DNA of 64,000 nt, from the IMG/VR virus record IMGVR_UViG_3300035698_029839, positions 233,711 to 297,710 of that record; one strand, given 5' to 3'. Position 1 is the first letter of the stretch; every line of letters starts with the position of its first letter. The position numbers were made by a program, and so were the translations under genes. The notes below the pieces were generated by a model that had not been told where the DNA came from, did not search any database, and was given only the letters and a program-made list of their open reading frames with translations. Of the stretch, positions 8,019 to 21,515 are shown piece by piece.

Positions 8019-8499
8019 ACCTATAAAACAGAAACCAAAACCATTAAAAACTCTTACTAAAGAACAAATAAGAGAATCTATACAATATACTATAAAGAAT
8101 GATATTTGTTATGGAATATTCAAAGCACCAAATAATAACTAATAATGATAATAATCAATGTGTAATAAGATATATAATAATACCTTATAATAACTAATAA
8201 TAGAAACACATAATATCTCTCTTATGAAGAGATCCATAATAAGAAATAATACAATATGATTAGTCCTAATAGGCTAGCACTCTGTCGATATTTAGATTTT
8301 TTATCTATTGTCGATAGTCCTGACCTATTAGAGAGATCAATATATTTGATAGGATATACAGATATTTAACAGGTAAAATACTGGTTTATAACATAGAAAA
8401 TACTGGTTCTCGATGAATCTTTATAAAAAAGAGAAAAAATATCTGGAAAATTAATAGATTTTTTTATTAAAATTTAAGATTATCCTATCGAAAAATCGA

Positions 8500-8632
8500 T
8501 TGTCTGGAATATCGACAGTATCGAAAAAATTCCAGACAAGCAGGAATTTTCTTGCAAAAGTGAATGAAAAATGGTAAGATATAGAAAATAGGTTGTCTGG
8601 AAAAGAGGGAGTGATTAACTAATTCCAGACAA
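8500..8632. promoter_or_regulatory. two inverted pairs TTGTCTGGAA-N20-TTCCAGACAA flanking a sigma70-type promoter
   Basis: pairs 8500-8539 and 8593-8632; TTGCAA 8552 N17 TAAGAT 8575 between them. Confidence 0.75.
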
Positions 8633-8660
8633 GTGGTTCTTTGATAGAAAGGTAGCAACA

Positions 8661-9365
8661 ATGGTAGAAATTATGTATAGGCCCTCAGATGTGGGTAAAG
8701 AGGTAAGGAATAGTCATGGAAAGATAATAAAAATAAGAAAATATCATTTAACAGAAAAGGAAAAAAAGATAGCACAAAACAAGTGGTCAAAAGTTACAGA
8801 TAATACGGACAAAAGGATAGTCAAGAGAGCAGGAGAGATCTTTTTCAATCCATTCCGCAAGGGAGTCTATTATTATCAGATATGTTCTTTATTTTTATTA
8901 GGAGCAAATAAGTGGCATAGTCTGAACTCTATCCTTAAAAAGATGGAGAAAATAATGTCAGAGGTAATAGTCAGAAAAGATGGAATTAGAATGACATCAT
9001 GGGAGAAATTCAGAGGTAAGTCTCAAAGAGTCCATGCTCTTCGCTGTAAGGATTATAAGGGAAGGGTACAGGAGAATATGGTTCTTCTTCAAAGATTGAC
9101 TAAATTCCATCCTTACGGATATAAGCTAAGACAAGTATGTAGTGCAATAGATATCATGAGAGTTACTAAGAGAGGATTTCCTAATGGTTGTTACTCTTAT
9201 AGGCTACATACTTATGATAATGAGAATCAAGCACTGCCTATGAGAGATTATAGTCAATTTGTTTTTCCTCGACATGAGAGAAAATATGTAAGTTACAAGT
9301 TTATAGGAACTGTTATAACAATGGACAAGGTTATAACTGAAGGGAAAGTAAATGAGATGTCATAA
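8661..9365 (+). CDS. basic protein, candidate DNA-binding regulator
   Basis: K/R-rich 234 aa ORF directly after the operator-like locus; function inferred only. Confidence 0.7.
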   Translation: MVEIMYRPSDVGKEVRNSHGKIIKIRKYHLTEKEKKIAQNKWSKVTDNTDKRIVKRAGEIFFNPFRKGVYYYQICSLFLLGANKWHSLNSILKKMEKIMSEVIVRKDGIRMTSWEKFRGKSQRVHALRCKDYKGRVQENMVLLQRLTKFHPYGYKLRQVCSAIDIMRVTKRGFPNGCYSYRLHTYDNENQALPMRDYSQFVFPRHERKYVSYKFIGTVITMDKVITEGKVNEMS

Positions 9366-9870
9366 ATGCAATCAAGATAGTATAAAGATTGTCATGGATG
9401 ATGATTTGTCGAAATCTACAATTCACATTATATGTGATATATGTGGTTTAGATATCGATAGTGGTGATAACCCAATGCTCTGTGATCTGTTTATTTATAA
9501 TGAGAATCTAGAGGCAGCAGAGAAATTAGGTATAGAAGCCTATATAGAAGATAAAAAGATAGGAGATAATCCTTATACTTTACTTCAATCTGATCAGATC
9601 CTTCTTAATAAGAGATGGGAGATAGGATTTAATAAGGAAAAAGATAGTTATGAGAAAGAGGCCTTATTAATTTCTGCCGAAAATTTAAAATATGCTCTAG
9701 AAAAAATGGAAGAAGAAAAAACTATTCTTACAGAACAACAAGCAGAACTATCTAAAAACCATACAAAACTATCTAAAAAGGTTAAGAAGCTCTCTAAGAT
9801 AGGATACTTGATGGGTTATAAGTATAAAAAAGACCTATTAAAGATAGTCTTAGAAATTCCAGACAAGTGA
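9352..9870 (+). CDS. Zn-ribbon plus coiled-coil protein
   Basis: CxxC..CxxC; C-terminus IPDK* is encoded by the repeat. Confidence 0.75.
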   Translation: MRCHKCNQDSIKIVMDDDLSKSTIHIICDICGLDIDSGDNPMLCDLFIYNENLEAAEKLGIEAYIEDKKIGDNPYTLLQSDQILLNKRWEIGFNKEKDSYEKEALLISAENLKYALEKMEEEKTILTEQQAELSKNHTKLSKKVKKLSKIGYLMGYKYKKDLLKIVLEIPDK

Positions 9871-9913
9871 TTTTCTAATCCTATATATAAAGAACATATA
9901 TAAAGGAGAAATC

Positions 9914-10267
9914 ATGAGTGATAAGAAAGCATATGTAGACGGTAATTTTGTTGTAGGAGTAGGGTCATATTATCTGTTACGCTGGGCGATAGCCTTTTAC
10001 CCTGCTTTGGTATTTGCAGCATGGATAGTAGAATTAACAAGGCCTGAGGCAGGAGAAAAAGAGACACTCCTTTACTTATTAACTGGCCCTTTATTCTGTA
10101 TAGTCTTTACTTTTTGTATATCTAGAATGTTGTTAGTTATTAAGGAATCATGGCCTTTCCTTGTGGGTCTTTATGCTATTACCTTATACCCGTTTATTAA
10201 ATTTATGCAGTGGCATGGTAGTTCTGGTGATACTCCTTTTCCTGGAGTTGACTGGTTTCCTTGGTAA
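9914..10267 (+). CDS. membrane protein
   Basis: three hydrophobic segments, AAGGAG RBS. Confidence 0.8.
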   Translation: MSDKKAYVDGNFVVGVGSYYLLRWAIAFYPALVFAAWIVELTRPEAGEKETLLYLLTGPLFCIVFTFCISRMLLVIKESWPFLVGLYAITLYPFIKFMQWHGSSGDTPFPGVDWFPW

Positions 10268-10310
10268 TTCCAGACAAGTGGTTTTTTAATAGTATCATAT
10301 GGAGGTAATT

Positions 10311-11273
10311 ATGAATAATAATGTTAAAAAGTTATCAGATATTGAAGCAAGTCCTGTTATTAGGAACAGAACATGGTTTAATGATCTTGATCAAGTATAT
10401 GGAACGAGTATTTCTCCTACTCATAATCTTGGTATGCCTAAAGGTAAGATTAGCTTATGGGCAGGAGAAAGAGGAGTTGGTAAGAGTAGATTGTGTATTG
10501 AGGTAGTCAAGAAATTTACTACTAACTATTCTGATGGTAAGGTTTTATATTTTCTAACAGAAGCTCCTTTGAATGATTTTGCTCAATGGGCAGTTGATGA
10601 TAATTGGCATTATAAGCATATGGTAGAATGTAGTGGTGCTAATAAGATAGATGAGATGGTTGAAATTATTTATCAAGTTAGGCCAAAACTTATATTTATT
10701 GATAGTGTTAACCAGATTGAAGATTTTACAGGCACTGCCAAATCTGCTAAAAGGCTTATAGATGGTGTTGAAGATATAAAAGGTTTAAGAGAAGCTACTT
10801 ATGATGTAGGTGCTCACTTAATCTTATTAGGTCAGATGAATGGAGATGGAAAGACTATTAAAGGTGGTTCAAGTTTGCCTCACTTGGTAGATATAGAGTT
10901 ATATGTAGTTATTGAAGATAAGAATAAGGGTTTATTTAGAATAGAAGTAGGTACAAAGCATAGATATGGCAGAACAGATAGAACTGCTAGGTTCCTGCAT
11001 ACTGACTATGGAGTAAATGAGGCATCTGAATCAGTTACTAATGATTTACCTGATGGTTATAGAAGAGTTTCAGGTTTGAGTCAGAGTGGTTTTATTACTG
11101 TTGGTCCTGATGGCTTGGCAGATACCAATGATCCTGAGTTTTTAGAGCATTTGGAGGCACATAGGTTAATTAACAATATGAACTCTGAATCTGTCTATGA
11201 TCCTGGTGATCCTGGTTTAGGATTACATATTAAGAACAGGGTTCCTACTTTATGGGAAAGATTTATTGGATAA
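10311..11273 (+). CDS. RadA/Sms-like RecA-superfamily ATPase
   Basis: Walker A GERGVGKS, Walker B IFIDS, GGSSLPHLVD and KHRYG matching RadA LEHxVD and KNRFG; GGAGG RBS favours ATG 10311. Confidence 0.8.
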   Translation: MNNNVKKLSDIEASPVIRNRTWFNDLDQVYGTSISPTHNLGMPKGKISLWAGERGVGKSRLCIEVVKKFTTNYSDGKVLYFLTEAPLNDFAQWAVDDNWHYKHMVECSGANKIDEMVEIIYQVRPKLIFIDSVNQIEDFTGTAKSAKRLIDGVEDIKGLREATYDVGAHLILLGQMNGDGKTIKGGSSLPHLVDIELYVVIEDKNKGLFRIEVGTKHRYGRTDRTARFLHTDYGVNEASESVTNDLPDGYRRVSGLSQSGFITVGPDGLADTNDPEFLEHLEAHRLINNMNSESVYDPGDPGLGLHIKNRVPTLWERFIG

Positions 11274-11543
11274 AGTTCTTGTAAAGTGAAAGAGCTTTGG
11301 TTATAATTTTTTTAAAGAAGAGCCCATTCTTATGTAAAATGAGTAAGGATAGGTACTTGAGTCTTTTTTCTATTAACAAATTTAACAATTCGTTAATATA
11401 TTCTTTAAAAAAATTAAAAAGTAGAGATAAAGTTATTGAAAAGTGAAAGTGAGTTAGTATAATAAGAGATATTGTATCACCCCTCCTCCTTTGGGGAGAA
11501 TGATATTTTTTATTGTTTTCCCCAAAATTTTTAAATTAGGGGG

Positions 11544-11572
11544 TTGACAAGTGAAAGTAGATGTGATAGTAT
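11544..11572 (+). promoter_or_regulatory. sigma70-type promoter with AAGTGAAAG spacer box
   Basis: TTGACA-N17-TAGTAT with TG extended -10. Confidence 0.75.
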
Positions 11573-11578
11573 AGAGAT

Positions 11579-11762
11579 TCGCGATAGGAGGTTCTTAATT
11601 GAACTGGCTTATCTATGCGGGTCGATGATTCGTGAATAAGGGGAGAATAGGGATATTAATTTATCTCTATTACTCCTAACTATAAATGGGACTTAGACGG
11701 TTCCCATCGTTACTATGGTTATAGTAGTGAGAGGTACTGGGTTACTTCTCGCTACTATTTTT
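11579..11762 (+). ncRNA. unknown structured small RNA
   Basis: strong promoter, several hairpins, long terminal hairpin plus T run, no long ORF. Confidence 0.5.
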
Positions 11763-11864
11763 AAAAAAGATTAAAGAAAAAAAAAGGATTATCCGATAGT
11801 AGTTAATAAATAGAAAGTAATTAGTTTTTGTTCGAGAAAATACAAATTAAGGAATAAACAAGAG

Positions 11865-12017
11865 ATGACTATCTCAACCAGAAATCCTGTTGTCGCAAAT
11901 TTACGAAGAAGAAACCATACCTTGGCAGTGCAGCCGATAAGCTGTGCCTTTATTGGTCAAAGGTATGCGGATATGCTCTGGTCCAATTGTCCTGAAAAGA
12001 AACATGGATCGGGGTAG
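11865..12017 (+). CDS. putative attenuator leader peptide, 50 aa
   Basis: MTISTRNPVVANLRRRNHTLAVQPISCAFIGQRYADMLWSNCPEKKHGSG*; AAGGA RBS; stop lies inside the antiterminator arm. Confidence 0.7.
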   Translation: MTISTRNPVVANLRRRNHTLAVQPISCAFIGQRYADMLWSNCPEKKHGSG

Positions 12018-12078
12018 TCGCTTTTGAATTTATAGTTCCTCGTTCAAAGGCGATTACCAAAGGTAATCGTCTTTTTTT
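12013..12078 (+). terminator. mutually exclusive antiterminator/terminator (attenuator)
   Basis: 12013-12028 pairs with 12043-12058 (16 bp); alternatively 12046-12058 pairs with 12062-12074, with T run to 12078. Confidence 0.85.
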
Positions 12079-12236
12079 ATTAGAAAAAAGTAAAGAGAAA
12101 AATGGAAACAATAGAAATGTTTAGAGAAATAGCGAAAGTTGATAAGATTCAGGAAAATCATAATGATTTTTATGAAATGGCTGAGAAGTATGGATTTTGT
12201 ACTCCTTGGAGTAATTGTGAAGAGGGTAATGAGTAT

Positions 12237-12274
12237 AGTTCTTTAAAAACGTAATGAATATAGTTCTTTAAAAA
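12237..12274 (+). promoter_or_regulatory. tandem boxA-like antitermination sites
   Basis: AGTTCTTTAAAAA twice; similar at 13263 and 16084. Confidence 0.55.
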
Positions 12275-12298
12275 GTAAATAGTATTATCACTTAAAAT

Positions 12299-12371
12299 TG
12301 TCCTTTAGTGTAATGGCTTAGCACGATTGCCTTTGACGCAATCAGTCGAAGTTCGAATCTTCGGAGGACAG
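12299..12371 (+). tRNA. tRNA-Gln(TTG)
   Basis: cloverleaf; ATTGC-CT TTG AC-GCAAT. Confidence 0.9.
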
Positions 12372-12468
12372 CTATGAATAGGATAATGTATAAAAATAAA
12401 AAAAGGAGTATTCCCCTATTATCAGAATATATATAATATAAAGTACATTTTAATAATAGGAGATTGTA

Positions 12469-13182
12469 ATGAAACAAAAAACAGGGCCTAAAAGGACTAG
12501 TATTATATGGCAGATGTCAAAAAAAGATTTTACAGAAAATGTGAAAAAAAGTTCTACTTTTAAAGAGATATTAAAATATTTTGGATTAGAAAATAAAGGT
12601 AGCAATTACAAAACATTAAAAAAAAGATTAGAGGAAGAAAATATAAATTATTCTCATATTCCTACAGGAGTAGGATGTAACAAAGGAATGAAAATAAATA
12701 GAAAAGCTATCTCATTAGAAAAAGTAATGATAGAAAATTCTACTTATTGCAGGGGGACTCTTAAAAAAAGATTATTAAAGAATGGTATGTTAGAAAATAA
12801 ATGTATGATCTGTGATCAACTACCTGAACATAATGGGATTAAATTAGTAATGGTTTTAGATCATATTAATGGAACTCCTAATGATCATAGATTAGAAAAT
12901 TTAAGATTACTTTGTCCTAATTGCAATAGCCAACAATCAACTTTTGCTGGAAAAAGGCATAAAAAACATTATTATTGTGAAAAATGTGGGAATAAAAGAA
13001 AAAATAAACAAAGTAAATATTGTTTTAGTTGTTCTGTTAAATTAAATGGGCAAAATAGAAGAAAAGTTAAAAATAGACCATCTAAAGAAAAATTATTAAA
13101 AGAAATAAAAGAAACTAATTATTGTGCTGTTGGTAGAAAATATGATGTAAGTGATAGTGCTATTAGAAAATGGTTGAAATGA
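12469..13182 (+). CDS. HNH homing endonuclease
   Basis: LDHING..DHRLENLRLLCPNCNS; paralog of 15078. Confidence 0.9.
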   Translation: MKQKTGPKRTSIIWQMSKKDFTENVKKSSTFKEILKYFGLENKGSNYKTLKKRLEEENINYSHIPTGVGCNKGMKINRKAISLEKVMIENSTYCRGTLKKRLLKNGMLENKCMICDQLPEHNGIKLVMVLDHINGTPNDHRLENLRLLCPNCNSQQSTFAGKRHKKHYYCEKCGNKRKNKQSKYCFSCSVKLNGQNRRKVKNRPSKEKLLKEIKETNYCAVGRKYDVSDSAIRKWLK

Positions 13183-13185
13183 TAT

Positions 13186-13259
13186 TCCCATGTAACTCAA
13201 TTAGGCAGAGTGGCACGCTGTTAACGTGTTGGTTGTAGGTTCGATTCCTACCGTGGGAG
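13186..13259 (+). tRNA. tRNA-Asn(GTT)
   Basis: cloverleaf. Confidence 0.9.
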
Positions 13260-13371
13260 TTCGATTCTTTGAAAAGTAAATAGGGGTTCCAAAAGGAACA
13301 CACATTGTGTTAAGTTTTAATTACTAACACATGGAGAGGTATAGCACTGAGTGGTATCTCTCCATGTTTTC

Positions 13372-13445
13372 TGACCTATAGCTTATGTGGGAAAAGCATT
13401 CGTCTTATAAGCGAAAGAGTCCAGGTTCGAATCCTGGTGGGTCAA
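13372..13445 (+). tRNA. tRNA-Ile(TAT)
   Basis: TTCGT-CT TAT AA-GCGAA. Confidence 0.85.
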
Positions 13446-13448
13446 TAT

Positions 13449-13521
13449 AGGCATAAAGCTCAGCAGGCAGAGCATCGTGCTGATATCACGAAGGCCGTTG
13501 GTTCGAATCCAGCTATGCCTA
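13449..13521 (+). tRNA. tRNA-Ile(GAT)
   Basis: cloverleaf. Confidence 0.9.
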
Positions 13522-13589
13522 TTAGAAAGAGGAATTCTTCTTTTTTTCCCGAAATAATATAGAATAAAGGACAAAAGGGAGAATTCATC

Positions 13590-13808
13590 ATGAAAGAAGT
13601 CTTGATAGAATTAGTAAAAAGGGTAAGTAGGAAAGCAGTTATATTAGCAATAGCTATGGTGTTGGTATATATGGTTATTATAACACCGAATGCCGTAAAT
13701 GCAGTGATAGCTATAGGGGTGATTTCTGGTTTATCAATAGTAGGAGCAGGACTTCAATTTTATTTAGATCTTAAAAAGATCAAAGATGACGAAACAGATA
13801 AAATTTAA
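13590..13808 (+). CDS. small two-TM membrane protein (holin-like topology)
   Basis: two TM helices, charged tail, AGGA-N17-GAAA promoter. Confidence 0.6.
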   Translation: MKEVLIELVKRVSRKAVILAIAMVLVYMVIITPNAVNAVIAIGVISGLSIVGAGLQFYLDLKKIKDDETDKI

Positions 13809-13947
13809 GCAGGTTGAATGTGAGTAAGTTATCGCTTATGGAGCCTGATGTGGATGGTTCGATTCCTCCTCTCTCGATTACAAATTGTTCGAGAGATAGC
13901 TTAACGGTAGAGCGCAGTAAAAACACTTATTCCTCCCACATATCTGC
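13809..13947 (+). ncRNA. Y-RNA(YrlA)-like RNA 1 with permuted tRNA module
   Basis: GCAGGTTGA..GTTATCG / CATATCTGC terminal stem; T arm, loop-closed acceptor TCTCTCGA/TCGAGAGA, then D arm. Confidence 0.75.
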
Positions 13948-13960
13948 TTTTTTAAACTTA

Positions 13961-14052
13961 GAAATATGGTGATAGGGCCTACAAAGCTTGGGTCAGCCAA
14001 CTACCCTAGGGACGCAAGTCATTGGTCTGGGGTCGAGTCCCAGTCATATTTC
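13961..14052 (+). ncRNA. non-canonical tRNA-like RNA
   Basis: 9-bp acceptor GAAATATGG/TCATATTTC, T arm CTGGG-GTCGAGT-CCCAG, atypical D and anticodon arms. Confidence 0.5.
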
Positions 14053-14060
14053 TCTTTTTT

Positions 14061-14134
14061 ACCCGCTTCGCTTAGTTGGCTAAAGCATCTGTCCTACAAA
14101 CAGAAGATCGTAGGTTCGAGTCCTATCGCGGGTA
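14061..14134 (+). tRNA. tRNA-Val(TAC)
   Basis: cloverleaf, C33. Confidence 0.85.
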
Positions 14135-14136
14135 TT

Positions 14137-14260
14137 ACACAGGTTGATCGCATGAAGGTTATCGGATAAAACATTTTTTCTTCAAACAAAAAATGCAAGT
14201 AGGGTTCAAACCCTTACAACCCAGAAATGGGAAAATTCTTCTGCACTAACATATCTGTGT
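14137..14260 (+). ncRNA. Y-RNA-like RNA 2
   Basis: ACACAGGTTGA..GTTATCG / CATATCTGTGT; T-arm-like hairpin and short closed stem. Confidence 0.7.
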
Positions 14261-14263
14261 TTT

Positions 14264-14334
14264 CCCCTATTGGTGTAATGGGAGCACGTGGCACTGTCGA
14301 TGCCAGGGCAGCAGATCGAAACTGCTATGGGGGG
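14264..14334 (+). tRNA. tRNA-Asp(GTC)
   Basis: cloverleaf, T loop ATCGAAA. Confidence 0.8.
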
Positions 14335-14339
14335 TTTTT

Positions 14340-14421
14340 GAGAGTATTGAGCAATTGGTGGCTTATCTGGCTGTAACCCAGATTCTGAAAAGACTTGTAG
14401 GTTCGAATCCTTCTGCTCTCA
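14340..14421 (+). tRNA. tRNA-Tyr(GTA)
   Basis: cloverleaf with variable arm. Confidence 0.85.
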
Positions 14422-14546
14422 TTTGGAGTTACTATGAATAAGAATTCTAGAAACTTATTTTAGTACTTTAGTCGTCTAAGGGCAAGGATACCTGTGCAAG
14501 CAGGAGATATGGTGTTCGAGTCGTCATCTAAATATTACTCCTAAAT

Positions 14547-14637
14547 GGTAAGTTGGCAGAGTCTGGCTTATTGCACTTGGTTGCTAACCAAGAGGGCCTT
14601 GAATAAGGTCCCATAGGTTCAAATCCTATACTTACCG
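14547..14637 (+). tRNA. tRNA-Ser(GCT)
   Basis: long variable arm, G73. Confidence 0.9.
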
Positions 14638-14719
14638 TTAGTGTGGAAAGCCGCACACGTAGTTACTTCCTTTTCGAAGGAGCAGACTAGGCTTGACGAA
14701 GGGGAAGAGACTCCTAACT

Positions 14720-14806
14720 GGATGAGCAAGCAGATTGGTGACTGCACTGGTTTTGAAAACCAACGAGCCTTTAAAAGCCTTGAGAGTTCGATTCCCTCCT
14801 CATCCG
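14720..14806 (+). tRNA. tRNA-Ser(TGA)
   Basis: long variable arm, G73. Confidence 0.85.
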
Positions 14807-14812
14807 CTTATT

Positions 14813-14885
14813 AGCGATATGGTGAAAATGGTAATCATAGATCCTTCATAAGGATCAGTTCCTGGTTCGATTCCAGATATCGCTA
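14813..14885 (+). tRNA. tRNA with CAT anticodon (elongator Met likely)
   Basis: GATCC-TT CAT AA-GGATC. Confidence 0.8.
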
Positions 14886-14893
14886 TTTATCAA

Positions 14894-14969
14894 CTGAACG
14901 TGGGGAAGTTTGGCCTAACCCGCCTGGTCTGGAGCCAGGAGAACGCTGGTTCAAATCCAGCCGTTCAGA
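14894..14969 (+). tRNA. tRNA-Pro(TGG) variant 1
   Basis: loop TC TGG AG. Confidence 0.8.
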
Positions 14970-15077
14970 TTTTGTAACACCGAATAGAAAATAAGCAGTC
15001 AAGACATATGTTTTATTAAAGGAATCCTGTCTTTTATGTCGAATATATAGATATAAGTTATTTAGATAGGAGATAAA

Positions 15078-15767
15078 ATGAGAAAAAGAACAAGTGTTGT
15101 GTGGAAGATATCAATAGAAGAATTAAAAAAGATAGTAAAAAAGAATGATAGTTTTGCAAAAATTTTAAAACATTTTGGGATGGCAATAGCAAGTGGAAAC
15201 TATAAAACATTAAAAAAAAGATTAAATTATGAAAATATAAGTTATTCTCATATATCTCAAGGGCTTAATAATAATAAAGGAAGAAAATTTCCAGAAAGAG
15301 CTATTCCCTTAAAAGAAGTAATGGTAAAAAACTCTACCTATTGTAGGGGAACTCTTAAAAAAAGATTATTAAAAAAGGGTTTATTAGAAAATAAATGTAA
15401 TATTTGTGGACAAATTTCTGAACATAATAATATTAAGTTAATAATGGTTTTAGATCATATAAATGGAGTTTCTAATGATCATCGCGTAGAGAATTTAAGA
15501 TTGCTTTGTCCTAATTGTAATAGCCAACAAAAAACATTTGCGGGAAGAAATTCTGTAAGAAAAAAATATAACTGTATTACTTGTGGTAAAAAAATTACAA
15601 AACATTCAAAATTGTGTAAAAGTTGCAGTGCTAGATTGCAAAAAAGAAAAGTTAAAAATAGACCTTCAGTAGAACAATTATTAAAAGAAATAAAAGAAAC
15701 TAATTATTGTGTTGTTGGTAGGAAATATGAAGTAAGTGATAATGCAGTAAGAAAATGGTTAAAATAA
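15078..15767 (+). CDS. HNH homing endonuclease
   Basis: LDHING..DHRVENLRLLCPNCNS. Confidence 0.9.
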   Translation: MRKRTSVVWKISIEELKKIVKKNDSFAKILKHFGMAIASGNYKTLKKRLNYENISYSHISQGLNNNKGRKFPERAIPLKEVMVKNSTYCRGTLKKRLLKKGLLENKCNICGQISEHNNIKLIMVLDHINGVSNDHRVENLRLLCPNCNSQQKTFAGRNSVRKKYNCITCGKKITKHSKLCKSCSARLQKRKVKNRPSVEQLLKEIKETNYCVVGRKYEVSDNAVRKWLK

Positions 15768-15769
15768 AA

Positions 15770-15841
15770 GGCCCATTCTTCTAGTGGCTAGGATATCAGG
15801 GTTTCATCCTGAAAACAGCGGTCCGACTCCGCTATGGGCTA
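15770..15841 (+). tRNA. tRNA-Glu(TTC)
   Basis: cloverleaf. Confidence 0.85.
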
Positions 15842-15890
15842 TTTAATCAAGGCAGAAACTGAGGGTTCGAGTCCCTTCCAGAGTATTCCT

Positions 15891-15962
15891 GCTCTTCTGG
15901 TGTAACGGTTAGCATCCGTGATTCTCAGTCACGAGATAGGGGTCCGACTCCCCTGAAGAGTA
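15891..15962 (+). tRNA. tRNA-Glu(CTC)
   Basis: cloverleaf. Confidence 0.85.
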
Positions 15963-16030
15963 TTTTTCCTCTTATAAGTCCTTGTCTTTTATGGATTTAA
16001 AAAAATATTAAAAAAATTGGAAAAAAGTTA

Positions 16031-16096
16031 TTGAAAAGTGAAAGAAAATCCGATATAGTAATATCATCATAACGAAAGTTATGACTTCTTTTACAA
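16031..16096 (+). promoter_or_regulatory. promoter plus boxB/boxA-like leader for the ncRNA operon
   Basis: TTGAAA-N17-TATAGT; TCATAAC-GAAA-GTTATGA hairpin then ACTTCTTTTACAA. Confidence 0.6.
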
Positions 16097-16115
16097 GTTA
16101 ATAGAGAGAAAAAAG

Positions 16116-16186
16116 AAACGGGTTGAAGTCTAAAAGTTATCGATCCTTGAAAATCAAACACACTTTTTGACACACCATATCCGTTT
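16116..16186 (+). ncRNA. Y-RNA-like RNA 3 (minimal)
   Basis: ACGGGTTGA..GTTATCG / CATATCCGT. Confidence 0.65.
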
Positions 16187-16201
16187 TTTCTAAAATATGC
16201 A

Positions 16202-16456
16202 TGTGGGTTGATTGATATTGGTTATCGATAATTACTGTGAAAAAGTGCAAGTAAGGATCAAAAAAGAGATTTAGGTAAAGTTAGATTGAGATCACGCCAA
16301 TCAATAAATCTAATGGGAAGACTGAAGATCTTTAAGAGAACCTAGGTTGAAACATACTAAAGGCTTTGTACTGTAAATTTCCCAAAACTTTGTTTAGTCC
16401 TTAGATATCCATGAGATATAAAAAAGGACATCTCCAATTTCTCCAACATATCCACA
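16202..16456 (+). ncRNA. Y-RNA-like RNA 4 with about 200-nt insert
   Basis: TGTGGGTTGA..GTTATCG / CATATCCACA. Confidence 0.65.
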
Positions 16457-16465
16457 GGCGTTTAT

Positions 16466-16537
16466 CTGAGGGTCGTCTAATCAGGATACCTCCTGTTAGG
16501 GGAGGAGATGTAGGTGTGACTCCTACTCCTTAGACCA
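16466..16537 (+). ncRNA. non-canonical tRNA-like RNA A, CCA-encoded
   Basis: cloverleaf, D loop lacks GG, T loop TGTGACT, anticodon loop TGTTAGG. Confidence 0.7.
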
Positions 16538-16540
16538 TTT

Positions 16541-16632
16541 TGCTCGGTAGTTTAAATATAAAACAGTTGCTCTGTTAATCATTTATGATTGCTTGCAACA
16601 GATGGTAGGAGTGATGCCTACCCTGAACACCA
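16541..16632 (+). ncRNA. non-canonical tRNA-like RNA B, extended anticodon arm, CCA-encoded
   Basis: GTTGC/GCAAC stem with distal hairpin; GGTAGG/CCTACC T stem. Confidence 0.65.
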
Positions 16633-16639
16633 AAATTAT

Positions 16640-16709
16640 ATTAGAGTAGTCTAATCAAGATACCCCCGTTGAGGGGGAGATGTAGGTGTGACTCCTACCT
16701 CTAATGCCA
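16640..16709 (+). ncRNA. non-canonical tRNA-like RNA C, paralog of A
   Basis: ATTAGAG/CTCTAAT-G-CCA; T arm identical to A; 5-nt anticodon loop. Confidence 0.7.
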
Positions 16710-16715
16710 ATATAT

Positions 16716-16895
16716 GTTAGGGTCTGCTCGAAAGAATTTATTCAGAGATGGGCTGTGAGCTATAAGTTTTGTTAAATGAGTTGGATGACTTGTTTAACGA
16801 AATGGGTTCGCAAAGTCAAAGAGGAAGTGTCTTACACATCCAAAGGTGAGCATGGATCAGAGACTTCGGAGGTTTGAATCCTCCCCCCAACACCA
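16716..16895 (+). ncRNA. 180-nt RNA with tRNA-like acceptor, T arm and CCA
   Basis: GTTAGGG/CCCCAAC-A-CCA, GGAGG-TTTGAAT-CCTCC, internal long hairpin. Confidence 0.6.
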
Positions 16896-16911
16896 ATTTT
16901 CATTTTTTTAC

Positions 16912-16998
16912 TGTTAGGTAGTTTAAGTAAAAAACAGTTATTAAGGCACACCCCTGTTTTGATAGCAGATGATAGGTGAGATACCTATCCCTTACACA
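16912..16998 (+). ncRNA. non-canonical tRNA-like RNA E, paralog of B
   Basis: 10-bp anticodon arm, GATAGG/CCTATC T stem. Confidence 0.6.
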
Positions 16999-17104
16999 TT
17001 GGGTAGCTTATGGGTAAAGTTGGTTATTGAGTCGATTAAAGGTTTATAGTGCTTTTAGTCAATGCCTTAATAACAGAAGGATGGGTCCGATTCCCTCCCC
17101 CGAT
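16998..17104 (+). ncRNA. non-canonical tRNA-like RNA F, very long anticodon arm
   Basis: ATTGGG/CCCGAT, D arm, GTTATTGAG/CTTAATAAC, T loop TCCGATT. Confidence 0.55.
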
Positions 17105-17135
17105 ATTTTTCTCTCTATCAGTTTAAAAAAATAAT

Positions 17136-17209
17136 TGCGGAGTAGAGCAGTCTGGCAGCTTGTCAGCCTCATAAGCTGAAGGTCGGAGGTTCAAATCCTT
17201 CCTCCGCTA
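17136..17209 (+). tRNA. tRNA-Met(CAT), initiator-like
   Basis: 1:72 mismatch, fMet-like D arm; lacks the three G-C anticodon-stem pairs. Confidence 0.8.
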
Positions 17210-17211
17210 TT

Positions 17212-17349
17212 GAAGTAAGTGGTTGTTGATATTCGTCAGATAAGGCAAATTCTAATTTTTCTCATGTCAAAAATAAGAGGCCTTTGTTATAATTCAAACA
17301 TGATTGGATTATGATGATTCGGAATATTGACTGGCCAGCCACTTACTTC
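17212..17349 (+). ncRNA. unknown rod-shaped RNA
   Basis: 14-bp terminal stem GAAGTAAGTGGTTG/CAGCCACTTACTTC plus inner stems. Confidence 0.5.
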
Positions 17350-17379
17350 TTCATTTTTCTTACACCGAATCATTATTTC

Positions 17380-17454
17380 CTGAACGTGGGAAAGCTTGGC
17401 CTAATCCGCGAGCTTTGGAAGCTCGAGACGCCAGTTCAAATCTGGCCGTTCTGA
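17380..17454 (+). tRNA. tRNA-Pro(TGG) variant 2
   Basis: loop TT TGG AA. Confidence 0.85.
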
Positions 17455-17457
17455 TAA

Positions 17458-17531
17458 CTCTCAGTGGGAAAGCTTGGTATTCCGTCTGGTTTGGGACCAG
17501 AAGATCAGAGGTTCGAATCCTCTCTGAGAGA
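17458..17531 (+). tRNA. tRNA-Pro(TGG) variant 3
   Basis: loop TT TGG GA. Confidence 0.85.
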
Positions 17532-17540
17532 TTAACCAAA

Positions 17541-17667
17541 GTGGGTTGATAGATAGTAGGTTATCGCTTATAACGAAGTGGTTGTGAGTTCGAGTCTCAC
17601 CGCGGAGGCAACTCTGTGTAGCTCAATGGCAGAGCACTAAAAATTCTATTGTCGCTAACACATCCAC
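17541..17667 (+). ncRNA. Y-RNA(YrlA)-like RNA 5 with permuted tRNA module
   Basis: T arm GTGAG-TTCGAGT-CTCAC, acceptor CGCGGAG-GCAA-CTCTGTG, D arm GCTC-AATGGCA-GAGC. Confidence 0.8.
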
Positions 17668-17700
17668 GGTTTTTTTAATAGTATAGCACTGAATAGTGTT

Positions 17701-17771
17701 GGGGGTATCGTCCAACGGGAAGACATCTGGTTTGCAACCAGAAAATAAGAGTTCGATTCTCTTTACCTCCA
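17701..17771 (+). tRNA. tRNA-Ala(TGC)
   Basis: G3:U70. Confidence 0.9.
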
Positions 17772-17778
17772 TTCTCTT

Positions 17779-17852
17779 GGGGACGCATGTGCCAAGGGTG
17801 GCGAGAGACCTTTGCAAGGTATCTGTGGTCAGTTCGATTCTGATCGTCTCCA
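17779..17852 (+). tRNA. tRNA-Ala(TGC), second copy
   Basis: G3:U70. Confidence 0.8.
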
Positions 17853-17854
17853 TT

Positions 17855-17963
17855 AAACAGGTTGATTGGTTAAAAGTTATCGATAAGTTCGACTCTTATT
17901 CTCCCCTTCTTTCATGGGGAGAAATGGCCTGGGGCCACCTTTTCTCCTACCACACATCTGTTT
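17855..17963 (+). ncRNA. Y-RNA-like RNA 6
   Basis: AAACAGGTTGA..GTTATCG / CACATCTGTTT; T arm then closed acceptor TCTCCCC/GGGGAGA. Confidence 0.7.
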
Positions 17964-18041
17964 TTTATAAAAAAAGGAAATTCTAAGTATATGTCGAAAT
18001 AGTAAGTAGTAAGCTATTTAACAATTACTTAGGATTTCAAT

Positions 18042-18449
18042 ATGAACTATAAGACAGGAAAATATGCAAAGAAAAAATGTATTGGATGTGGATTAAAAAC
18101 ATTAAACATAAAATTTTGTAGTAATAAATGCCAGCAATTATATTTTTGGGAAAAAAGAAAAAAAGAGATAAAAAAAACAGGAGAGATCCCAGAAAGAAGA
18201 GTTGGTATACGATATCTTAAAGAGGTCAGGGGAGATAAATGTGAGATATGTGATCTTAAAGAATGGAATGGAAAAGATATTACTATGATCATGGATCATA
18301 TCGATGGAGACTCATTAAATAATAAAGATCTAAATCTTAGATTGATTTGTCCTAACTGTGACTCTCAGTTATCAACCTATAAAAATAGGAATAAAGGTAA
18401 TGGTAGACATTCAAGAAGAGTAAGATATGCAGAAGGTAAAAGTTATTAA
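18042..18449 (+). CDS. HNH endonuclease
   Basis: MDHIDG..NN...NLRLICPNCDS. Confidence 0.85.
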   Translation: MNYKTGKYAKKKCIGCGLKTLNIKFCSNKCQQLYFWEKRKKEIKKTGEIPERRVGIRYLKEVRGDKCEICDLKEWNGKDITMIMDHIDGDSLNNKDLNLRLICPNCDSQLSTYKNRNKGNGRHSRRVRYAEGKSY

Positions 18450-18450
18450 T

Positions 18451-18523
18451 GCTGGTGTAGCTCAATTGGCAGAGCGCCTCATTTGTAATGAGGATGTTGT
18501 GGGTTCGACTCCTATCACCAGCT
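18451..18523 (+). tRNA. tRNA-Thr(TGT)
   Basis: cloverleaf. Confidence 0.9.
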
Positions 18524-18528
18524 TTAAA

Positions 18529-18600
18529 GGTGCGATAGCTGAGGCGGTTTAGCGCGAGACTGAAAATCTTGAGACGGAGGTTCGAGTCCTCTTCGTACCA
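18529..18600 (+). tRNA. tRNA-Phe(GAA)
   Basis: cloverleaf. Confidence 0.9.
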
Positions 18601-18614
18601 CTTTGTAGCACTGA

Positions 18615-18687
18615 GGGCCTGTAGCTCAATTGGCAGAGCGCCAAGCTCATAACTTGTGGATTGTAGGTTCGAGTCCTTCCTGGCCCA
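18615..18687 (+). tRNA. tRNA with CAT anticodon, probably Ile2 (lysidine)
   Basis: GGGCCTGTAGCTCA start typical of Ile2. Confidence 0.75.
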
Positions 18688-18749
18688 TTAATAATTTTTT
18701 TTAGGAGAAAGATCATGAAACGTAAGAAAGAAAAATCTGGTAAAATGTA

Positions 18750-18824
18750 GGGTGTGAAGCTTATTCTGGTAAAGCACGCGACTTTTAATCGCGAGTCTTG
18801 GGAGTTCGAATCTCCCTACACCCA
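18750..18824 (+). tRNA. tRNA-Lys(TTT)
   Basis: cloverleaf. Confidence 0.9.
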
Positions 18825-18829
18825 TTAGT

Positions 18830-18903
18830 GCCTTTGAAGCTTATTTGGCAAAGCACCTGGTTCTTACCCAGGAGTCTTGAGCGTTCGAATCGCTCCAGAG
18901 GCA
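18830..18903 (+). tRNA. tRNA-Lys(CTT)
   Basis: cloverleaf. Confidence 0.85.
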
Positions 18904-18909
18904 TTTCCT

Positions 18910-18982
18910 GTCAGAGGTGATGTAATTGGCAGCATATCAGACTGTGAATCTGAGTGAGCGAGTTCAAATCTCGTCCTTTGAC
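18910..18982 (+). tRNA. tRNA-His(GTG)
   Basis: G-1:C73. Confidence 0.9.
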
Positions 18983-19068
18983 CTTTTAAAAGGATTTGAA
19001 AATAAATAAAGGATTCAGATCCCTATTTTAGAATATAAGGTATAAACTATTTTTTTTGGAGAATAGAA

Positions 19069-19398
19069 ATGCCTTATAAAAATAAAGAAGATCAGTTAGA
19101 ATGTCAGAGAAGGTACTATCGTAATCATAGAAAAACTATGATCGAAAGAACCAATAAAAGAGCCAAAGAAATACGAAAATGGTGGAAAGAGTATAAAAAA
19201 ACACAAAAATGTGAAAAATGTGGAGAAAATCACCCAGCTTGTATTTGTTTTCATCATAGAGATCCAGAAGAAAAAGATATAGATCTATCCACTGCCGTTA
19301 CTCATAATCATTGGGGAGAAAAGAGAATAAAAAAAGAGTTATTAAAATGTGATGTTATTTGTTCTAATTGTCATCTTAAAATTCATTGGAATGATTAA
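19069..19398 (+). CDS. HNH endonuclease
   Basis: CxxC, FHHRDP, CDVICSNCH. Confidence 0.85.
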   Translation: MPYKNKEDQLECQRRYYRNHRKTMIERTNKRAKEIRKWWKEYKKTQKCEKCGENHPACICFHHRDPEEKDIDLSTAVTHNHWGEKRIKKELLKCDVICSNCHLKIHWND

Positions 19399-19404
19399 TT
19401 TTTC

Positions 19405-19475
19405 GCTCGGGTGGTCTAATGGAATGATGACAGATTGCAAATCTGTAGGCGAGAGTTCGATTCTCTCCCTGAGCT
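19405..19475 (+). tRNA. tRNA-Cys(GCA)
   Basis: U73. Confidence 0.9.
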
Positions 19476-19900
19476 TTTCCAGACAAGTGGTTTTTTATTA
19501 TTATTAAGTATAAATATTAATTTTTGGTAAAAAGGATTAAAAGATGGTAAAATATGTATTAACTGAAGAACAAGAAAAGAAGTTAAACGATGCAGATCTT
19601 GGACAATGGAAGAAACTAAATAATAAGGGTCAACAAGCTATTAAACAGAGAATGGCGATTGCTGACAGAATTGGACTAAAATTATCTGAAATAAAAAGAA
19701 TAGATTTATGAAGAAATCAGATGAAGACAGTTGTAGTGGTTTTAAAAGAGGATGGACTTCTGATCATGAAGAGTGCATAACATGTAAGAAGAATAGTCCT
19801 GCCAGATATAAAAAGTGCATGCAAGCAGTTAAAAAGTCGTTAAAAGAGAACTTTAGCACCGATGAAGAGATAGAGAAGTGGAAAAAAAAGAAAGTGAGAA

Positions 19901-20164
19901 ATGAAGATGAAAAGCTATAAATCGATACCTGTCGAAGTAGAAGCAATTCAATTTTTCGATACTAAAGAAAGTTTTGATGAAACTAAAGAGATTTTTGGAG
20001 AAAGATTATCTTCTAGTCTCCGAAATTTTCCTAGAGCTTTTTTTAGAGTAGAAAATGGGAAAACTGTCCCTTTATATAATAATTCATGGATCGTGAAAAA
20101 AGATAATAAATTAGAGATTTTGGATGATGAAACATTTAAAAAAACATATGAAGAGAAAGGGTAA
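19901..20164 (+). CDS. hypothetical phage protein
   Basis: YK..PVEVEAIQF...FKKTYE motif. Confidence 0.7.
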   Translation: MKMKSYKSIPVEVEAIQFFDTKESFDETKEIFGERLSSSLRNFPRAFFRVENGKTVPLYNNSWIVKKDNKLEILDDETFKKTYEEKG

Positions 20165-20556
20165 AAAATGGTATTTTTTAAAAGGTATAAAATAAATGGG
20201 ATGTTATTGTTTTGGAACATTTGGTTATGGGCTATTCTTTTCATAACAGGATGTAGCACTGTCAAAACTCCTCCTTGGAGTGAGAATGAAGTTTCAAGAA
20301 TGTCTGAAGTAGGACAAAATAAAACAGTTCCTATAGTTTTAATAAAGGTAGATTGATGGATATATCTAAAATATTTTGTTTTTTAGGACTTCATGACTGG
20401 TATTATGGAAATTTCCAGACAGGAGAGATGTCAAAATGGACAGGAGATCATGTTGGAGTTAGAGGAAGATCCTGTGTAAATTGTAATAAAAACCAAATAA
20501 AGAAAAAGAAGAAATATGTAACTGTTGATAGTTTTGAAAAACAATCAAATGAATAA

Positions 20557-20588
20557 GCGGGTGTGGTATAATGGCAAAATGCAAGGTT
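20557..20588 (+). pseudogene. 5' half of a tRNA (Gly-like), truncated at the anticodon loop
   Basis: GCGGGTG-TG-GTAT-AATGGCA-AAAT-G-CAAGG-TT ends at the HNH stop codon. Confidence 0.65.
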
Positions 20589-21250
20589 TATATATTTAAA
20601 AATCCATGATCTAAATCCCAGTGATGATTGGGACAAAGAAACATTAAATTTTTAATATCATTAACAACTTTTAATTTTGTGTTTTTGTTAAATTGATTAA
20701 TAGCTTTAATATGACACAAATCTAATTTGTTATTATATGAACAAAGTGGACATTTATTTGGTTTAAGATTATAAAATTTTGCTATTTGATGAGCATGATT
20801 TCTGATGGATTGATATTTGTGTCTTGCATAGGTAGATGTAAAATCTTTAATATATTTCTCTCCATATTGTTCTATTCTGTTAAGAGTAAGACATTTTTGA
20901 CAATAATGGGTTTTTGATTGAGTTAGATTTTGACATCTTAAACATTTTCTTTTAGGGCGTTTTGGAAAAAGACTATTATTTGTTTTTGCAGCACAGGATC
21001 TAGAACAGTATTTAGGGTTTTTAGTTTTTGTTCCACAAGTAAAACAATTAATTATAGGTCTATTAGGAGCTTTTATTTTTATTATTTCTCCAAAACATTC
21101 TTTTAAAGCATTATTCCATGATCCGAATCTTTTGCTTACAGTCCATTTATCAAAAGATCCATATTTATTATAATCATTTAATGATGGAATTTTTTTTATT
21201 TTAATTTTAACTCTTTTAAGGTCTTCTATAAGTTTATTAGTTGTTATCAT
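20588..21250 (-). CDS. HNH homing endonuclease
   Basis: KRFGSWNNAL homing-endonuclease-associated repeat, LCHIK..NLMFLCPNHH. Confidence 0.85.
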   Translation of the reverse strand: MITTNKLIEDLKRVKIKIKKIPSLNDYNKYGSFDKWTVSKRFGSWNNALKECFGEIIKIKAPNRPIINCFTCGTKTKNPKYCSRSCAAKTNNSLFPKRPKRKCLRCQNLTQSKTHYCQKCLTLNRIEQYGEKYIKDFTSTYARHKYQSIRNHAHQIAKFYNLKPNKCPLCSYNNKLDLCHIKAINQFNKNTKLKVVNDIKNLMFLCPNHHWDLDHGFLNI

Positions 21251-21273
21251 TATTACTCCTATAGTTTATTTAT

Positions 21274-21510: not shown

Positions 21511-21515
21511 TTCAA

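What the first reader, a model, noticed from the sequence alone, without database searches (positions are those of the whole stretch)
8500..9365. Candidate master regulator of the TTCCAGACAA regulon with an autoregulatory operator
Seen: the only full inverted copies I found lie here, as two pairs with identical geometry (TTGTCTGGAA-N20-TTCCAGACAA). They bracket a sigma70-type promoter directly upstream of a basic 234-aa ORF with no motif I recognise. Inference: this protein binds the box, activating the single-site promoters and repressing itself. Alternatively it is a recombinase or initiator acting at these sites.
Basis: inference. Interest (0 to 1): 0.65.

Follow-up and report, generated by a model that had tools for sequence, protein, structure and literature searches.

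The report
Megaphage promoter-box regulator candidate with operator
A giant marine phage puts one 10-base box in front of about 50 genes, and an uncharacterised basic early protein whose own host-type promoter is bracketed by two inverted pairs of that box is the best, still unproven, candidate for the factor that reads it.

Summary
TTCCAGACAA occurs 45 times in the window (0.13 expected). The only inverted copies form two N20 pairs at 8500/8530 and 8593/8623. They bracket TTGCAA-N17-TAAGAT upstream of a 234-aa ORF (pI 10) that matches no known family.

The window is the end of a 298-kb fragment of a roughly 480-kb phage. The box heads 44 co-oriented promoter-like cassettes from 9.8 to 50.2 kb.

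The ORF has over 100 metagenomic homologues. Across 58 distinct upstream regions the same layout recurs: inverted pair, host-type promoter, inverted pair, RBS, gene. The box sequence differs between phages, and each phage's operator box matches the box of its own downstream promoters. In two complete relatives (548 and 461 kb) the gene plus its pairs heads a 32-60-kb block of boxes.

Phage sigma factors are weak rivals. One keeps an unchanged DNA-reading helix although the box changes. The small ones sit behind a box promoter in one genome.

The predicted structure is confident but shows only a weak winged-helix-like core. DNA binding is not shown. A deeply conserved RadA-like ATPase neighbour keeps a replication or recombination role open.

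If true, it is a MotA-like function in a new protein family.

The parts
8500..8509 (-). Box copy, left arm of the distal inverted pair (TTGTCTGGAA on +)
   Evidence: Exact match. The arm keeps the box. On the minus strand it is followed by a T-run and TAGGAT, so a weak leftward promoter cannot be excluded.
8530..8539 (+). Box copy, right arm of the distal pair, ending 12 nt before the -35 hexamer
   Evidence: There is no -10-like hexamer at +27 (the sequence there is AAAGTG), so this is a binding site, not a promoter.
8552..8580 (+). Host sigma70-type promoter TTGCAA-N17-TAAGAT with TGn extension; predicted start near 8587
   Evidence: Read. It belongs to the phage's TTGnAAAGTGAA... early promoter class. 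The position is conserved in 52 of 60 related regions at 9/12 or better, and 38 of 60 carry TG.
8593..8602 (-). Box copy, left arm of the proximal pair, about +6 to +15 of the predicted transcript
8623..8632 (+). Box copy, right arm of the proximal pair, 29 nt before the start codon
   Evidence: In RNA the two proximal arms could also pair as a 10-bp hairpin.
8647..8652 (+). Ribosome-binding site GAAAGG, 8 nt before the ATG
   Evidence: The same GAAAGG appears in nearly all related loci.
8661..9365 (+). ORF234: basic early protein of an uncharacterised family, candidate reader of the box
9352..9870 (+). ORF172: zinc-ribbon plus coiled-coil protein. Its start overlaps the ORF234 stop, so it is probably co-translated. 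Found only in the closer clade.
   Evidence: A homologue starts at +691 in 48 loci. It is absent in L071, where the ATPase gene follows directly.
9857..50240 (+). Block of 44 single-site box cassettes (41 exact, 3 TTCCAGACAG), all on the + strand. Each consists of the box, nTGr, a T-run, TAGrTT and R.
10299..11273 (+). RadA/Sms-like RecA-core ATPase behind the box at 10268; the conserved neighbour of the ORF234 family
8400..8480 (.). Conserved AT-rich module left of the distal pair, function unknown
   Evidence: Its sequence is kept across phages whose boxes differ. No Rfam family matches it.

Best explanation
ORF234 is an early phage protein made by host RNA polymerase from a sigma70-type promoter. 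It binds the phage's own 10-bp box as a sequence-specific DNA-binding protein.

At about 50 co-oriented sites the box lies in the -35 region, followed by an A/T tract and a TAnnnT hexamer. There the bound protein stands in for the missing -35 contact and switches on a 40-kb block of tRNAs and small accessory genes. This works like T4 MotA at middle promoters.

At its own promoter, four box copies in two inverted pairs sit at about -87 to -48 and +6 to +45. They carry no -10 of their own. When occupied they would clamp the early promoter and set or shut off the protein's own synthesis.

Shown: the anatomy, its conservation, and the co-variation of operator and promoter boxes. Inferred: that ORF234 is the binder, and the signs of regulation.
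For: 1. Box statistics and strand bias.
2. Cassette logo: the box, G10 T11 G12 R13, T14-19, and TAnnnT at +27 in 35 of 47 sites, i.e. 17 bp after the box. Cassettes abut stop codons (24 of 41) or tRNA 3' ends.
3. The arms of the pairs keep only the box and not the -10 part, so they look like free-standing binding sites.
4. The same layout (pair, promoter, pair, RBS, gene) is found in related loci. Both pairs exceed the 99th percentile of shuffles in 36 of 58 distinct regions.
5. At least 12 box variants occur between phages. In every phage with enough downstream DNA, the operator box equals that phage's promoter box.
6. In the complete genome G002, TTCCAGAC occurs 41 times on the gene strand, in a block headed by the pairs and the homologue. 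In the complete genome G003, TGCCAGAGT occurs 74 times forward. Its only reverse copies within the block are the two operator arms just upstream of the homologue. Cross-counts are at background.
7. The ORF234 promoter belongs to the phage's host-type early class.
8. The protein has pI 10. The AF2 model has pLDDT 92, and nearly all of the 50 listed VIA matches are winged-helix domains, most of them DNA-binding proteins.
9. The sigma rivals are weakened.
10. ORF234 terminal branches are longer where the box core departs from CCAG (median 0.33 against 0.21, p = 0.005).
Against: - No experiment or model shows DNA binding.
- The fold matches are weak (Z at most 5.2, within the range the tool calls common), and no whole-fold relative exists.
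- I found no residue whose identity tracks the box independently of phylogeny. The branch-length signal is confounded by lineage isolation.
- The family's most deeply conserved trait is adjacency to a RadA-like ATPase, even in 47-52% GC relatives that lack the N20 pair layout.
- In L045 the inverted pairs also flank other early promoters, so pairs mark promoters controlled by the box reader, not necessarily autoregulation.
- The transcription start is unresolved. The best -10 predicts about +39, yet 11 genes start at +33.
Confidence: 0.45

Rival explanations
1. The box is read by some other phage product, either a small phage sigma factor or an unidentified early DNA-binding protein. ORF234 is merely the first and most tightly controlled gene of the regulon. 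Its own job would lie in DNA replication or recombination together with the RadA-like ATPase it always precedes, for example as a loader or mediator.
For: The ORF234-family and RadA-like genes are adjacent in 44 close loci and in three very distant members. The genome encodes two sigma70-family proteins, and the small one has an early-class promoter. With 17 bp between the box and TAGrTT, the box sits where a sigma region 4 would read. Pairs also occur at other early promoters in L045.
Against: Sigma2's region-4 helix is unchanged between phages with TTCCAGACAA and with TGCCAGAGTG. In G003 the tandem small sigma genes lie directly behind a box promoter, so they act downstream of the box reader. 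Box copies without any -10 element, conserved as inverted pairs, fit a free DNA-binding protein better than a holoenzyme. In phages where only TTCCAG is constant, that core lies 21 bp from the -10-like hexamer, too far for a usual -35. No other candidate gene is tied to the pairs.
Confidence: 0.3
2. ORF234 is a replication initiator. The four box copies plus the conserved AT-rich module at 8400-8480 form an origin, and the RadA-like ATPase is the helicase it loads. Autorepression through inverted repeats would parallel iteron-plasmid Rep proteins. The dispersed boxes would be a secondary, DnaA-box-like transcriptional use.
For: Several of the listed fold rows are Orc1/Cdc6/Cdt1 winged-helix domains. 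The helicase-like neighbour is conserved. The region left of the pairs is 72-82% A+T, with a module conserved across phages. Inverted repeats overlap the gene's own promoter.
Against: There are no tandem direct iterons. The roughly 50-75 further boxes are dispersed, co-oriented with the genes, and carry fixed promoter-like sequence downstream, which an origin does not explain. ORF234 gave no hit in Pfam (which holds the Rep and initiator families) or in PDB sequences. Cumulative GC skew shows no turn at the site. The Orc-type rows are tied with many unrelated winged-helix proteins.
Confidence: 0.1
3. The inverted pairs act in RNA, not DNA. The proximal pair forms a 10-bp hairpin in the 5' leader that sets mRNA stability or translation, and the box in other transcripts is a processing or termination signal.
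For: The leader 8587-8665 folds with the arms paired, at -17.1 kcal/mol and z = -2.25. The box is followed by a U-run and abuts the ends of genes.
Against: The distal pair lies upstream of the promoter yet has the same geometry. Single boxes form at best a 3-4-bp stem, and many variants (gTGa) form none. Relatives replace the T-run by an A-run, which fits DNA shape rather than a U-tract. No Rfam family matches.
Confidence: 0.05

Closest known systems
T4 MotA (with AsiA): sigma appropriation at middle promoters
   Same: Both are early phage proteins of about 210-234 aa. In T4 the protein binds a 9-10-bp phage-specific box that replaces the -35 element at about 60 promoters, which otherwise keep a host-type -10. 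Those promoters drive tRNAs and prereplicative genes (PMC2988021, read). Here the numbers, cargo and position in the programme are alike.
   Different: There is no sequence or fold relationship: no MotA family among the Pfam hits, PF09158 absent from the record, and MotA not among the fold matches. The box here is invariant, whereas MotA boxes are loose. The spacing to the best -10-like hexamer is 17 bp, not 12 +/- 1. Operator-like inverted pairs sit at the gene's own promoter. AsiA (PF09010) was not searched for; none of the four ORFs scanned at this locus hit an AsiA family.
Phage-encoded sigma factors such as SPO1 gp28 (from my own knowledge, not tested here)
   Same: An early product redirects host core polymerase to a private, highly conserved promoter sequence used by a whole gene block.
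   Different: ORF234 has no sigma region 2 or 4. The phage's real sigma genes fit the role poorly.
Iteron-plasmid Rep proteins (RepA, RepE, pi): autorepression at inverted repeats (from my own knowledge)
   Same: These are basic proteins of similar size built from winged-helix domains. They bind inverted half-sites over their own promoter and are linked to a helicase.
   Different: ORF234 has no Rep family hit. There is no tandem iteron array. The half-sites are 30 bp apart centre to centre. The remaining sites are dispersed promoters.
Mu Mor/C and lambda CII activators that bind at or over the -35 region
   Same: These are phage activators needed by sigma70 polymerase at promoters that lack a usable -35. 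Mor binds a dyad centred at -43.5 (abstract of PMC4390567, listed).
   Different: They are small dimers on compact dyads or direct repeats at one to a few promoters. They are unrelated in sequence, and they have no genome-wide regulon of about 50 sites.

Membership tests
T4 MotA family | MotA N-terminal activation domain and C-terminal double-wing (MotCF) domain | tested here: not met
   ORF234 gave no MotA family among its Pfam hits. PF09158 was not found anywhere in the record. MotA is not among the 50 rows listed for the VIA or Foldseek searches.
T4 MotA family | Box placed 12 +/- 1 bp upstream of a sigma70 -10 element, replacing the -35 | tested here: inconclusive
   The box does replace the -35 region. 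TAnnnT lies 17 bp after the box in 35 of 47 sites and 12 bp after it in only 13 of 47. The reference geometry is from PMC2988021.
T4 MotA family | Needs the co-factor AsiA bound to sigma70 region 4 | not tested
   AsiA was not searched for. ORF172, the co-translated neighbour, has a zinc ribbon and is absent from the distant clade.
Winged-helix DNA-binding proteins (fold class) | Helix-turn-helix followed by a beta-hairpin wing, with a clear structural match to known members | tested here: inconclusive
   Nearly all of the 50 listed VIA rows are winged-helix domains covering residues of about 60-190, but Z is only 4.0-5.2. The best Foldseek E-value is 0.79.
Sigma70-family sigma factors | Regions 2 and 4 | tested here: not met
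   ORF234 has no Sigma70_r2 or Sigma70_r4 hit. The record's two sigma-like ORFs lie elsewhere.
Iteron-type replication initiators (Rep_3-like) | Rep family domain and tandem direct iterons at an origin | tested here: not met
   No Pfam, NCBIfam or PDB sequence hit. Repeat analysis of 8100-8700 shows inverted pairs, not an iteron array.
Iteron-type replication initiators (Rep_3-like) | Inverted half-sites over the gene's own promoter, and a linked helicase | tested here: met
   Two inverted pairs flank the promoter. A RadA-like ATPase is the conserved neighbour. This feature is shared with many regulators and does not by itself define the family.
Autoregulated phage transcription factors (functional class) | The factor's own recognition sequence, in operator-like arrangement, at its own promoter, conserved and co-varying with its other sites | tested here: met
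   That ORF234 is the factor remains an assumption.
Autoregulated phage transcription factors (functional class) | Direct sequence-specific binding of the protein to the box | not testable with these tools
   No protein-DNA prediction or assay was available. The homodimer job gave no verdict.

The most novel reading that the evidence does not exclude
ORF234 founds a large, unnamed family of -35-replacing activators with at least 280 clusters at 50% identity, none matching any Pfam family and none detected in GenBank phage records by tblastn with ORF234 or two distant members. Its DNA specificity drifts together with 50-75 promoters and its own operator. This would give each megaphage a private promoter code that insulates its early-to-middle switch from related co-infecting phages. 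The same protein would be functionally coupled to a RadA-like motor, linking transcription switching to DNA replication or recombination.
Probability: 0.25. Interest if true: 0.8.

Novelty: new variant of a known kind. Interest (0 to 1): 0.62.

Why it matters
Nearly nothing is known about how uncultured 300-550-kb phages time their genes. This locus gives a complete and testable circuit: a host-type promoter, a candidate regulator, an operator, and a regulon of about 50 sites.

Natural specificity variants exist in related phages (TTCCAGACAA, TTCCAGGCG, TGCCAGAGTG, ATCTAGAC and others). Protein and box can therefore be swapped in a simple reporter without culturing the phage.

It would also be a source of orthogonal promoter and activator pairs, and a case study of protein-DNA co-evolution across a whole regulon.

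Tried and rejected
- **Family and homology searches for ORF234.** All were blank: Pfam, PHROGs and NCBIfam; PDB sequences searched with the family profile; Foldseek against PDB and BFVD; ESM Atlas by shape and by features; tblastn of ORF234 and of two distant members against 50,697 phage records; megablast of the locus; and Pfam on ten long distant members.
- **Literature.** A search for the box found only unrelated primer sequences.
- **Homodimer prediction.** Score 0.00, no verdict. This is not evidence either way.
- **T7-type RNA polymerase.** PF00940 was not found in the record, but that search had no positive control.
- **"G003 lacks the small sigma".** I first concluded this and withdrew it after one search found two divergent copies.
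- **Specificity residues.** Residue-by-residue search (for example position 157 R/M/H, position 152 Y/T) gave only clade-level splits, with 5-9 trait changes on the tree.
- **Box plus T-run as an intrinsic terminator.** Rejected: the stems are 0-4 bp.
- **T-run as a -10 element.** Rejected because relatives use an A-run at the same place.
- **Sigma54-like reading of CTGGAA.** Rejected on orientation and on the missing -12 element.
- **GC skew.** No inflection at the locus.
- **Motif-without-gene test.** A scan of viral contigs for the box cassette found only the two known relatives and one 14%-complete fragment, which is uninformative.

Full report
**What the window is.** The 64-kb window is the last part of a single 297,710-bp virus record with 31% G+C. 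CheckV rates the record 62% complete, which implies a phage of roughly 480 kb. It carries 33 tRNA genes. No GenBank phage matches it, either in DNA or through this protein.

**Check of the observation.** TTCCAGACAA occurs 45 times in the window against 0.13 expected. In the whole record it occurs 50 times on the + strand and 3 times on the - strand.
- The only paired inverted copies are 8500/8530 and 8593/8623. Each pair has exactly 20 nt between arms, and the pairs start 93 bp apart.
- Between them lies TTGCAA-N17-TAAGAT with a TGn extension at 8552-8580. GAAAGG at 8647-8652 follows, then the ATG at 8661.
- The ORF is 234 aa with pI 10.0 and matches no Pfam, PHROG or NCBIfam family.

**What the single boxes are.** There are 41 exact single copies plus three TTCCAGACAG variants. 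All lie on the + strand between 9.8 and 50.2 kb, at a median spacing of 577 bp.
- In 24 of 41 cases the box directly abuts a stop codon, and four abut a tRNA 3' end.
- A fixed context follows the box: G10 T11 G12 R13, T at 14-19, then T27 A28 G29 r T T and a purine at 33.
- TAnnnT is found at +27 in 35 of 47 genome-wide sites, which is 17 bp after the box. It is found at +22 in 13 of 47.
- The box therefore occupies the -35 region of a promoter that has a host-like -10 but no usable -35.
- Related phages put an A-run where this one has a T-run. That points to a DNA-shape spacer, not a -10 element or a U-tract.

*The start point is unresolved.* The +27 hexamer predicts a start near +39. Yet 11 of 43 genes have their ATG exactly at +33. 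For the radical SAM gene at 39065 that ATG must be real, because the CxxxCxxC motif lies at residues 15-22. Either these are leaderless starts, or those genes are read from upstream promoters.

*Cargo of the block.* It holds the tRNAs, a PARP-like protein, an SPFH protein, the radical SAM enzyme and many small ORFs.

**The arms of the pairs are not promoters.** The right arm at 8530 is followed by the -35 of the host-type promoter and has no -10-like hexamer. The minus-strand arms in this phage and its relatives keep the box core but not the TG, T-run and TAGrTT context. The box is thus a separable module that recurs without polymerase-binding elements. This is what a free-standing DNA-binding protein needs and a sigma subunit does not.

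Relative to a start near 8587, the arms lie at about -87 to -48 and +6 to +45. Bound protein there would flank and overlap the polymerase footprint.

**Related phages.** The protein has 126 word-search relatives at 43-71% identity. A profile search found 280 cluster representatives, 210 of them at E up to 1e-10. None has a named domain. I fetched 80 metagenome loci and three long viral contigs.
- The upstream layout is conserved: an inverted pair centred near -143, then TTGACA/TTGCAA-N17-TAnnAT with its -35 starting at a median of -113 (52 of 60 regions at 9/12 or better, 38 of 60 with TG). A second inverted pair follows near -50, then GAAAGG and the ATG.
- Both pairs exceed the 99th percentile of shuffled controls in 36 of 58 distinct regions. 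Most of the rest still show CTGGAA...TTCCAG by eye.
- The box itself differs between phages: TTCCAGACAA, TTCCAGGCG, TTCCAGGTAA, ATCCAGACA, ATCTAGAC, AACCAGTCGC, TCCCATAGAA, TCCACAAG, TTCCGCAAG, TACCAGA, TGCCAGAGTG and TTCTAAACAT.
- Wherever enough downstream DNA was held, the operator box equals the box of that phage's own downstream cassettes.

*Whole genomes.* These make the same point.
- G002 is complete at 548 kb. It has 41 TTCCAGAC on the gene strand, in a block from 155 to 187 kb headed by the pairs and the homologue.
- G003 is complete at 461 kb with terminal repeats. It has 74 forward TGCCAGAGT, most of them in a block from 367 to 427 kb. The only reverse copies within the block are the two operator arms just upstream of the homologue.
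- Each genome holds the other's box only at background level.

**Who reads the box?** Three lines favour ORF234.
- It is the one gene tied to the operator in all these phages.
- Its promoter belongs to the phage's host-type early class, TTGnAAAGTGAA...TATAAT, which has 14 co-oriented copies in the record. It can therefore be made before any box promoter fires.
- It is strongly basic. Its confident AF2 model (pLDDT 92, pTM 0.88) gives a match list made almost entirely of winged-helix domains, most of them from DNA-binding proteins, over residues of about 60-190. Z is only 4.0-5.2.

*The sigma rivals.* The record encodes two sigma70-family proteins.
- The 243-aa one sits next to a clamp-loader gene and is 55-84% identical in the three relatives. 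Its region-4 helix is unchanged although the box differs.
- The small one has an early-class promoter here. In G003, however, its two tandem counterparts lie directly behind a box promoter, so they act downstream of the box reader.
- No T7-type polymerase and no MotA domain was found.

*A weak co-evolution signal.* ORF234 terminal branches are longer in phages whose box core departs from CCAG (median 0.33 against 0.21, one-sided p = 0.005, or 0.018 without the longest branch). Isolated lineages could show both effects for unrelated reasons. I could not find a residue that tracks the box independently of phylogeny.

**What argues against, or for something more.**
- The gene is followed by a RadA/Sms-like RecA-core ATPase in 44 loci. 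The same holds in three very distant members from 47-52% G+C phages.
- Those distant members lack the N20 pairs. One of them (L108) nevertheless has its own 20-nt motif twice upstream of the gene, 90 bp apart, and once before the ATPase gene.
- This deep pairing keeps open a replication or recombination role: either instead of box reading (rival 1) or together with it at an origin-like control region (rival 2).
- The region left of the pairs is 72-82% A+T and holds an 80-nt module conserved across phages with different boxes. GC skew shows no turn there, and there are no iterons.
- In L045, further inverted pairs flank two strong host-type promoters ahead of the tRNA region. The pairs therefore mark early promoters controlled by the box reader, and not strictly autoregulation.
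- The proximal arms could also pair as an RNA hairpin in the leader. The distal pair, which lies upstream of the promoter, has the same geometry, and that favours a DNA-level role.

**Comparison with known systems.** In function the closest system is T4 MotA. That is an early protein reading a phage-specific box that replaces the -35 at about 60 middle promoters, which keep a sigma70 -10 (PMC2988021). Membership is excluded, because there is no homology in sequence or fold.

The design also differs in three ways: an invariant box, 17-bp rather than 12-bp spacing to the best -10-like hexamer, and an operator at the gene's own promoter. The operator logic resembles iteron-plasmid Rep proteins and classical phage repressors. 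That comparison rests on my own knowledge and was tested only through the negative family scans.

**Steps that failed or were left out.** The homodimer job returned no verdict.

**Verdict.** I give it about 0.45. An unidentified reader, with ORF234 acting as a DNA-metabolism protein, gets about 0.3. An initiator or origin reading gets about 0.1.

Noticed in passing
window 12299-24076: An array of 33 tRNA genes lies inside the box block. Four box copies (19477, 21593, 23250, 24078) begin 1-4 nt after a tRNA 3' end.
   Followed up: partly
window 30873-32207: A 444-aa ORF carries WGR, PARP regulatory and PARP catalytic domains (PARP E = 1.9e-25) and sits behind a box promoter.
   Followed up: no
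window 39065-39916: A radical SAM protein whose start codon lies exactly 33 nt after the start of its box. CxxxCxxC at residues 15-22 shows that this ATG is the real start. Ten other genes share this exact offset, so their mRNAs may be leaderless.
   Followed up: partly
window 260, 11440, 29336, 37663, 52146 (and nine more places in the record): A second promoter family, TTGAAAAGTGAAAGT followed by TATAAT. AAAGTGAAAGT occurs 14 times on the + strand and never on the - strand. It looks like the host-polymerase early class. The ORF234 promoter and the small sigma gene's promoter belong to it.
   Followed up: partly
window 8400-8480: An AT-rich module of about 80 nt (ATCGAyGGATCT ... TCTGGAAAATTAATAGATTTTTTTATT) is conserved upstream of the distal pair in phages whose boxes differ. 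It has no Rfam match and its function is unknown.
   Followed up: partly
window 10299-11273: A RadA/Sms-like RecA-core ATPase (TIGR00416 E = 2.8e-15, far below the family cut-off; PDB RadA 2.7e-5) always follows the ORF234 family gene, even in very distant relatives (L106-L108).
   Followed up: yes
window 9352-9870: ORF172 has an N-terminal CxxC...CxxC zinc ribbon plus a coiled coil and is acidic. Its start overlaps the ORF234 stop codon. A homologue sits at the same offset in 48 loci of the closer clade and is absent from the distant clade.
   Followed up: partly
window 49585, 49960, 50231: Three one-mismatch boxes (TTCCAGACAG) have the full downstream promoter context. They extend the block to 50.2 kb.
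   Followed up: yes
L045 9189-9505: In a 57%-identity relative, two further inverted pairs of its own box (TACCAGA) flank two strong TTGACA-N17-TATAAT promoters ahead of the tRNA region.
   Followed up: partly
genome record 139346-140077 and 179029-179661 (outside the window): Two sigma70-family genes. The 243-aa one lies next to a clamp-loader-like gene and is highly conserved. The small one is early-class here but lies behind a box promoter in G003.
   Followed up: yes
window 56090-57226: A fusion of a cytidylyltransferase-like domain and dephospho-CoA kinase (CoaE), outside the box block.
   Followed up: no
genome record about 154717-154850 (outside the window): A 9-nt tandem repeat, AGTAGTTCA, in about 15 copies.
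   Followed up: no
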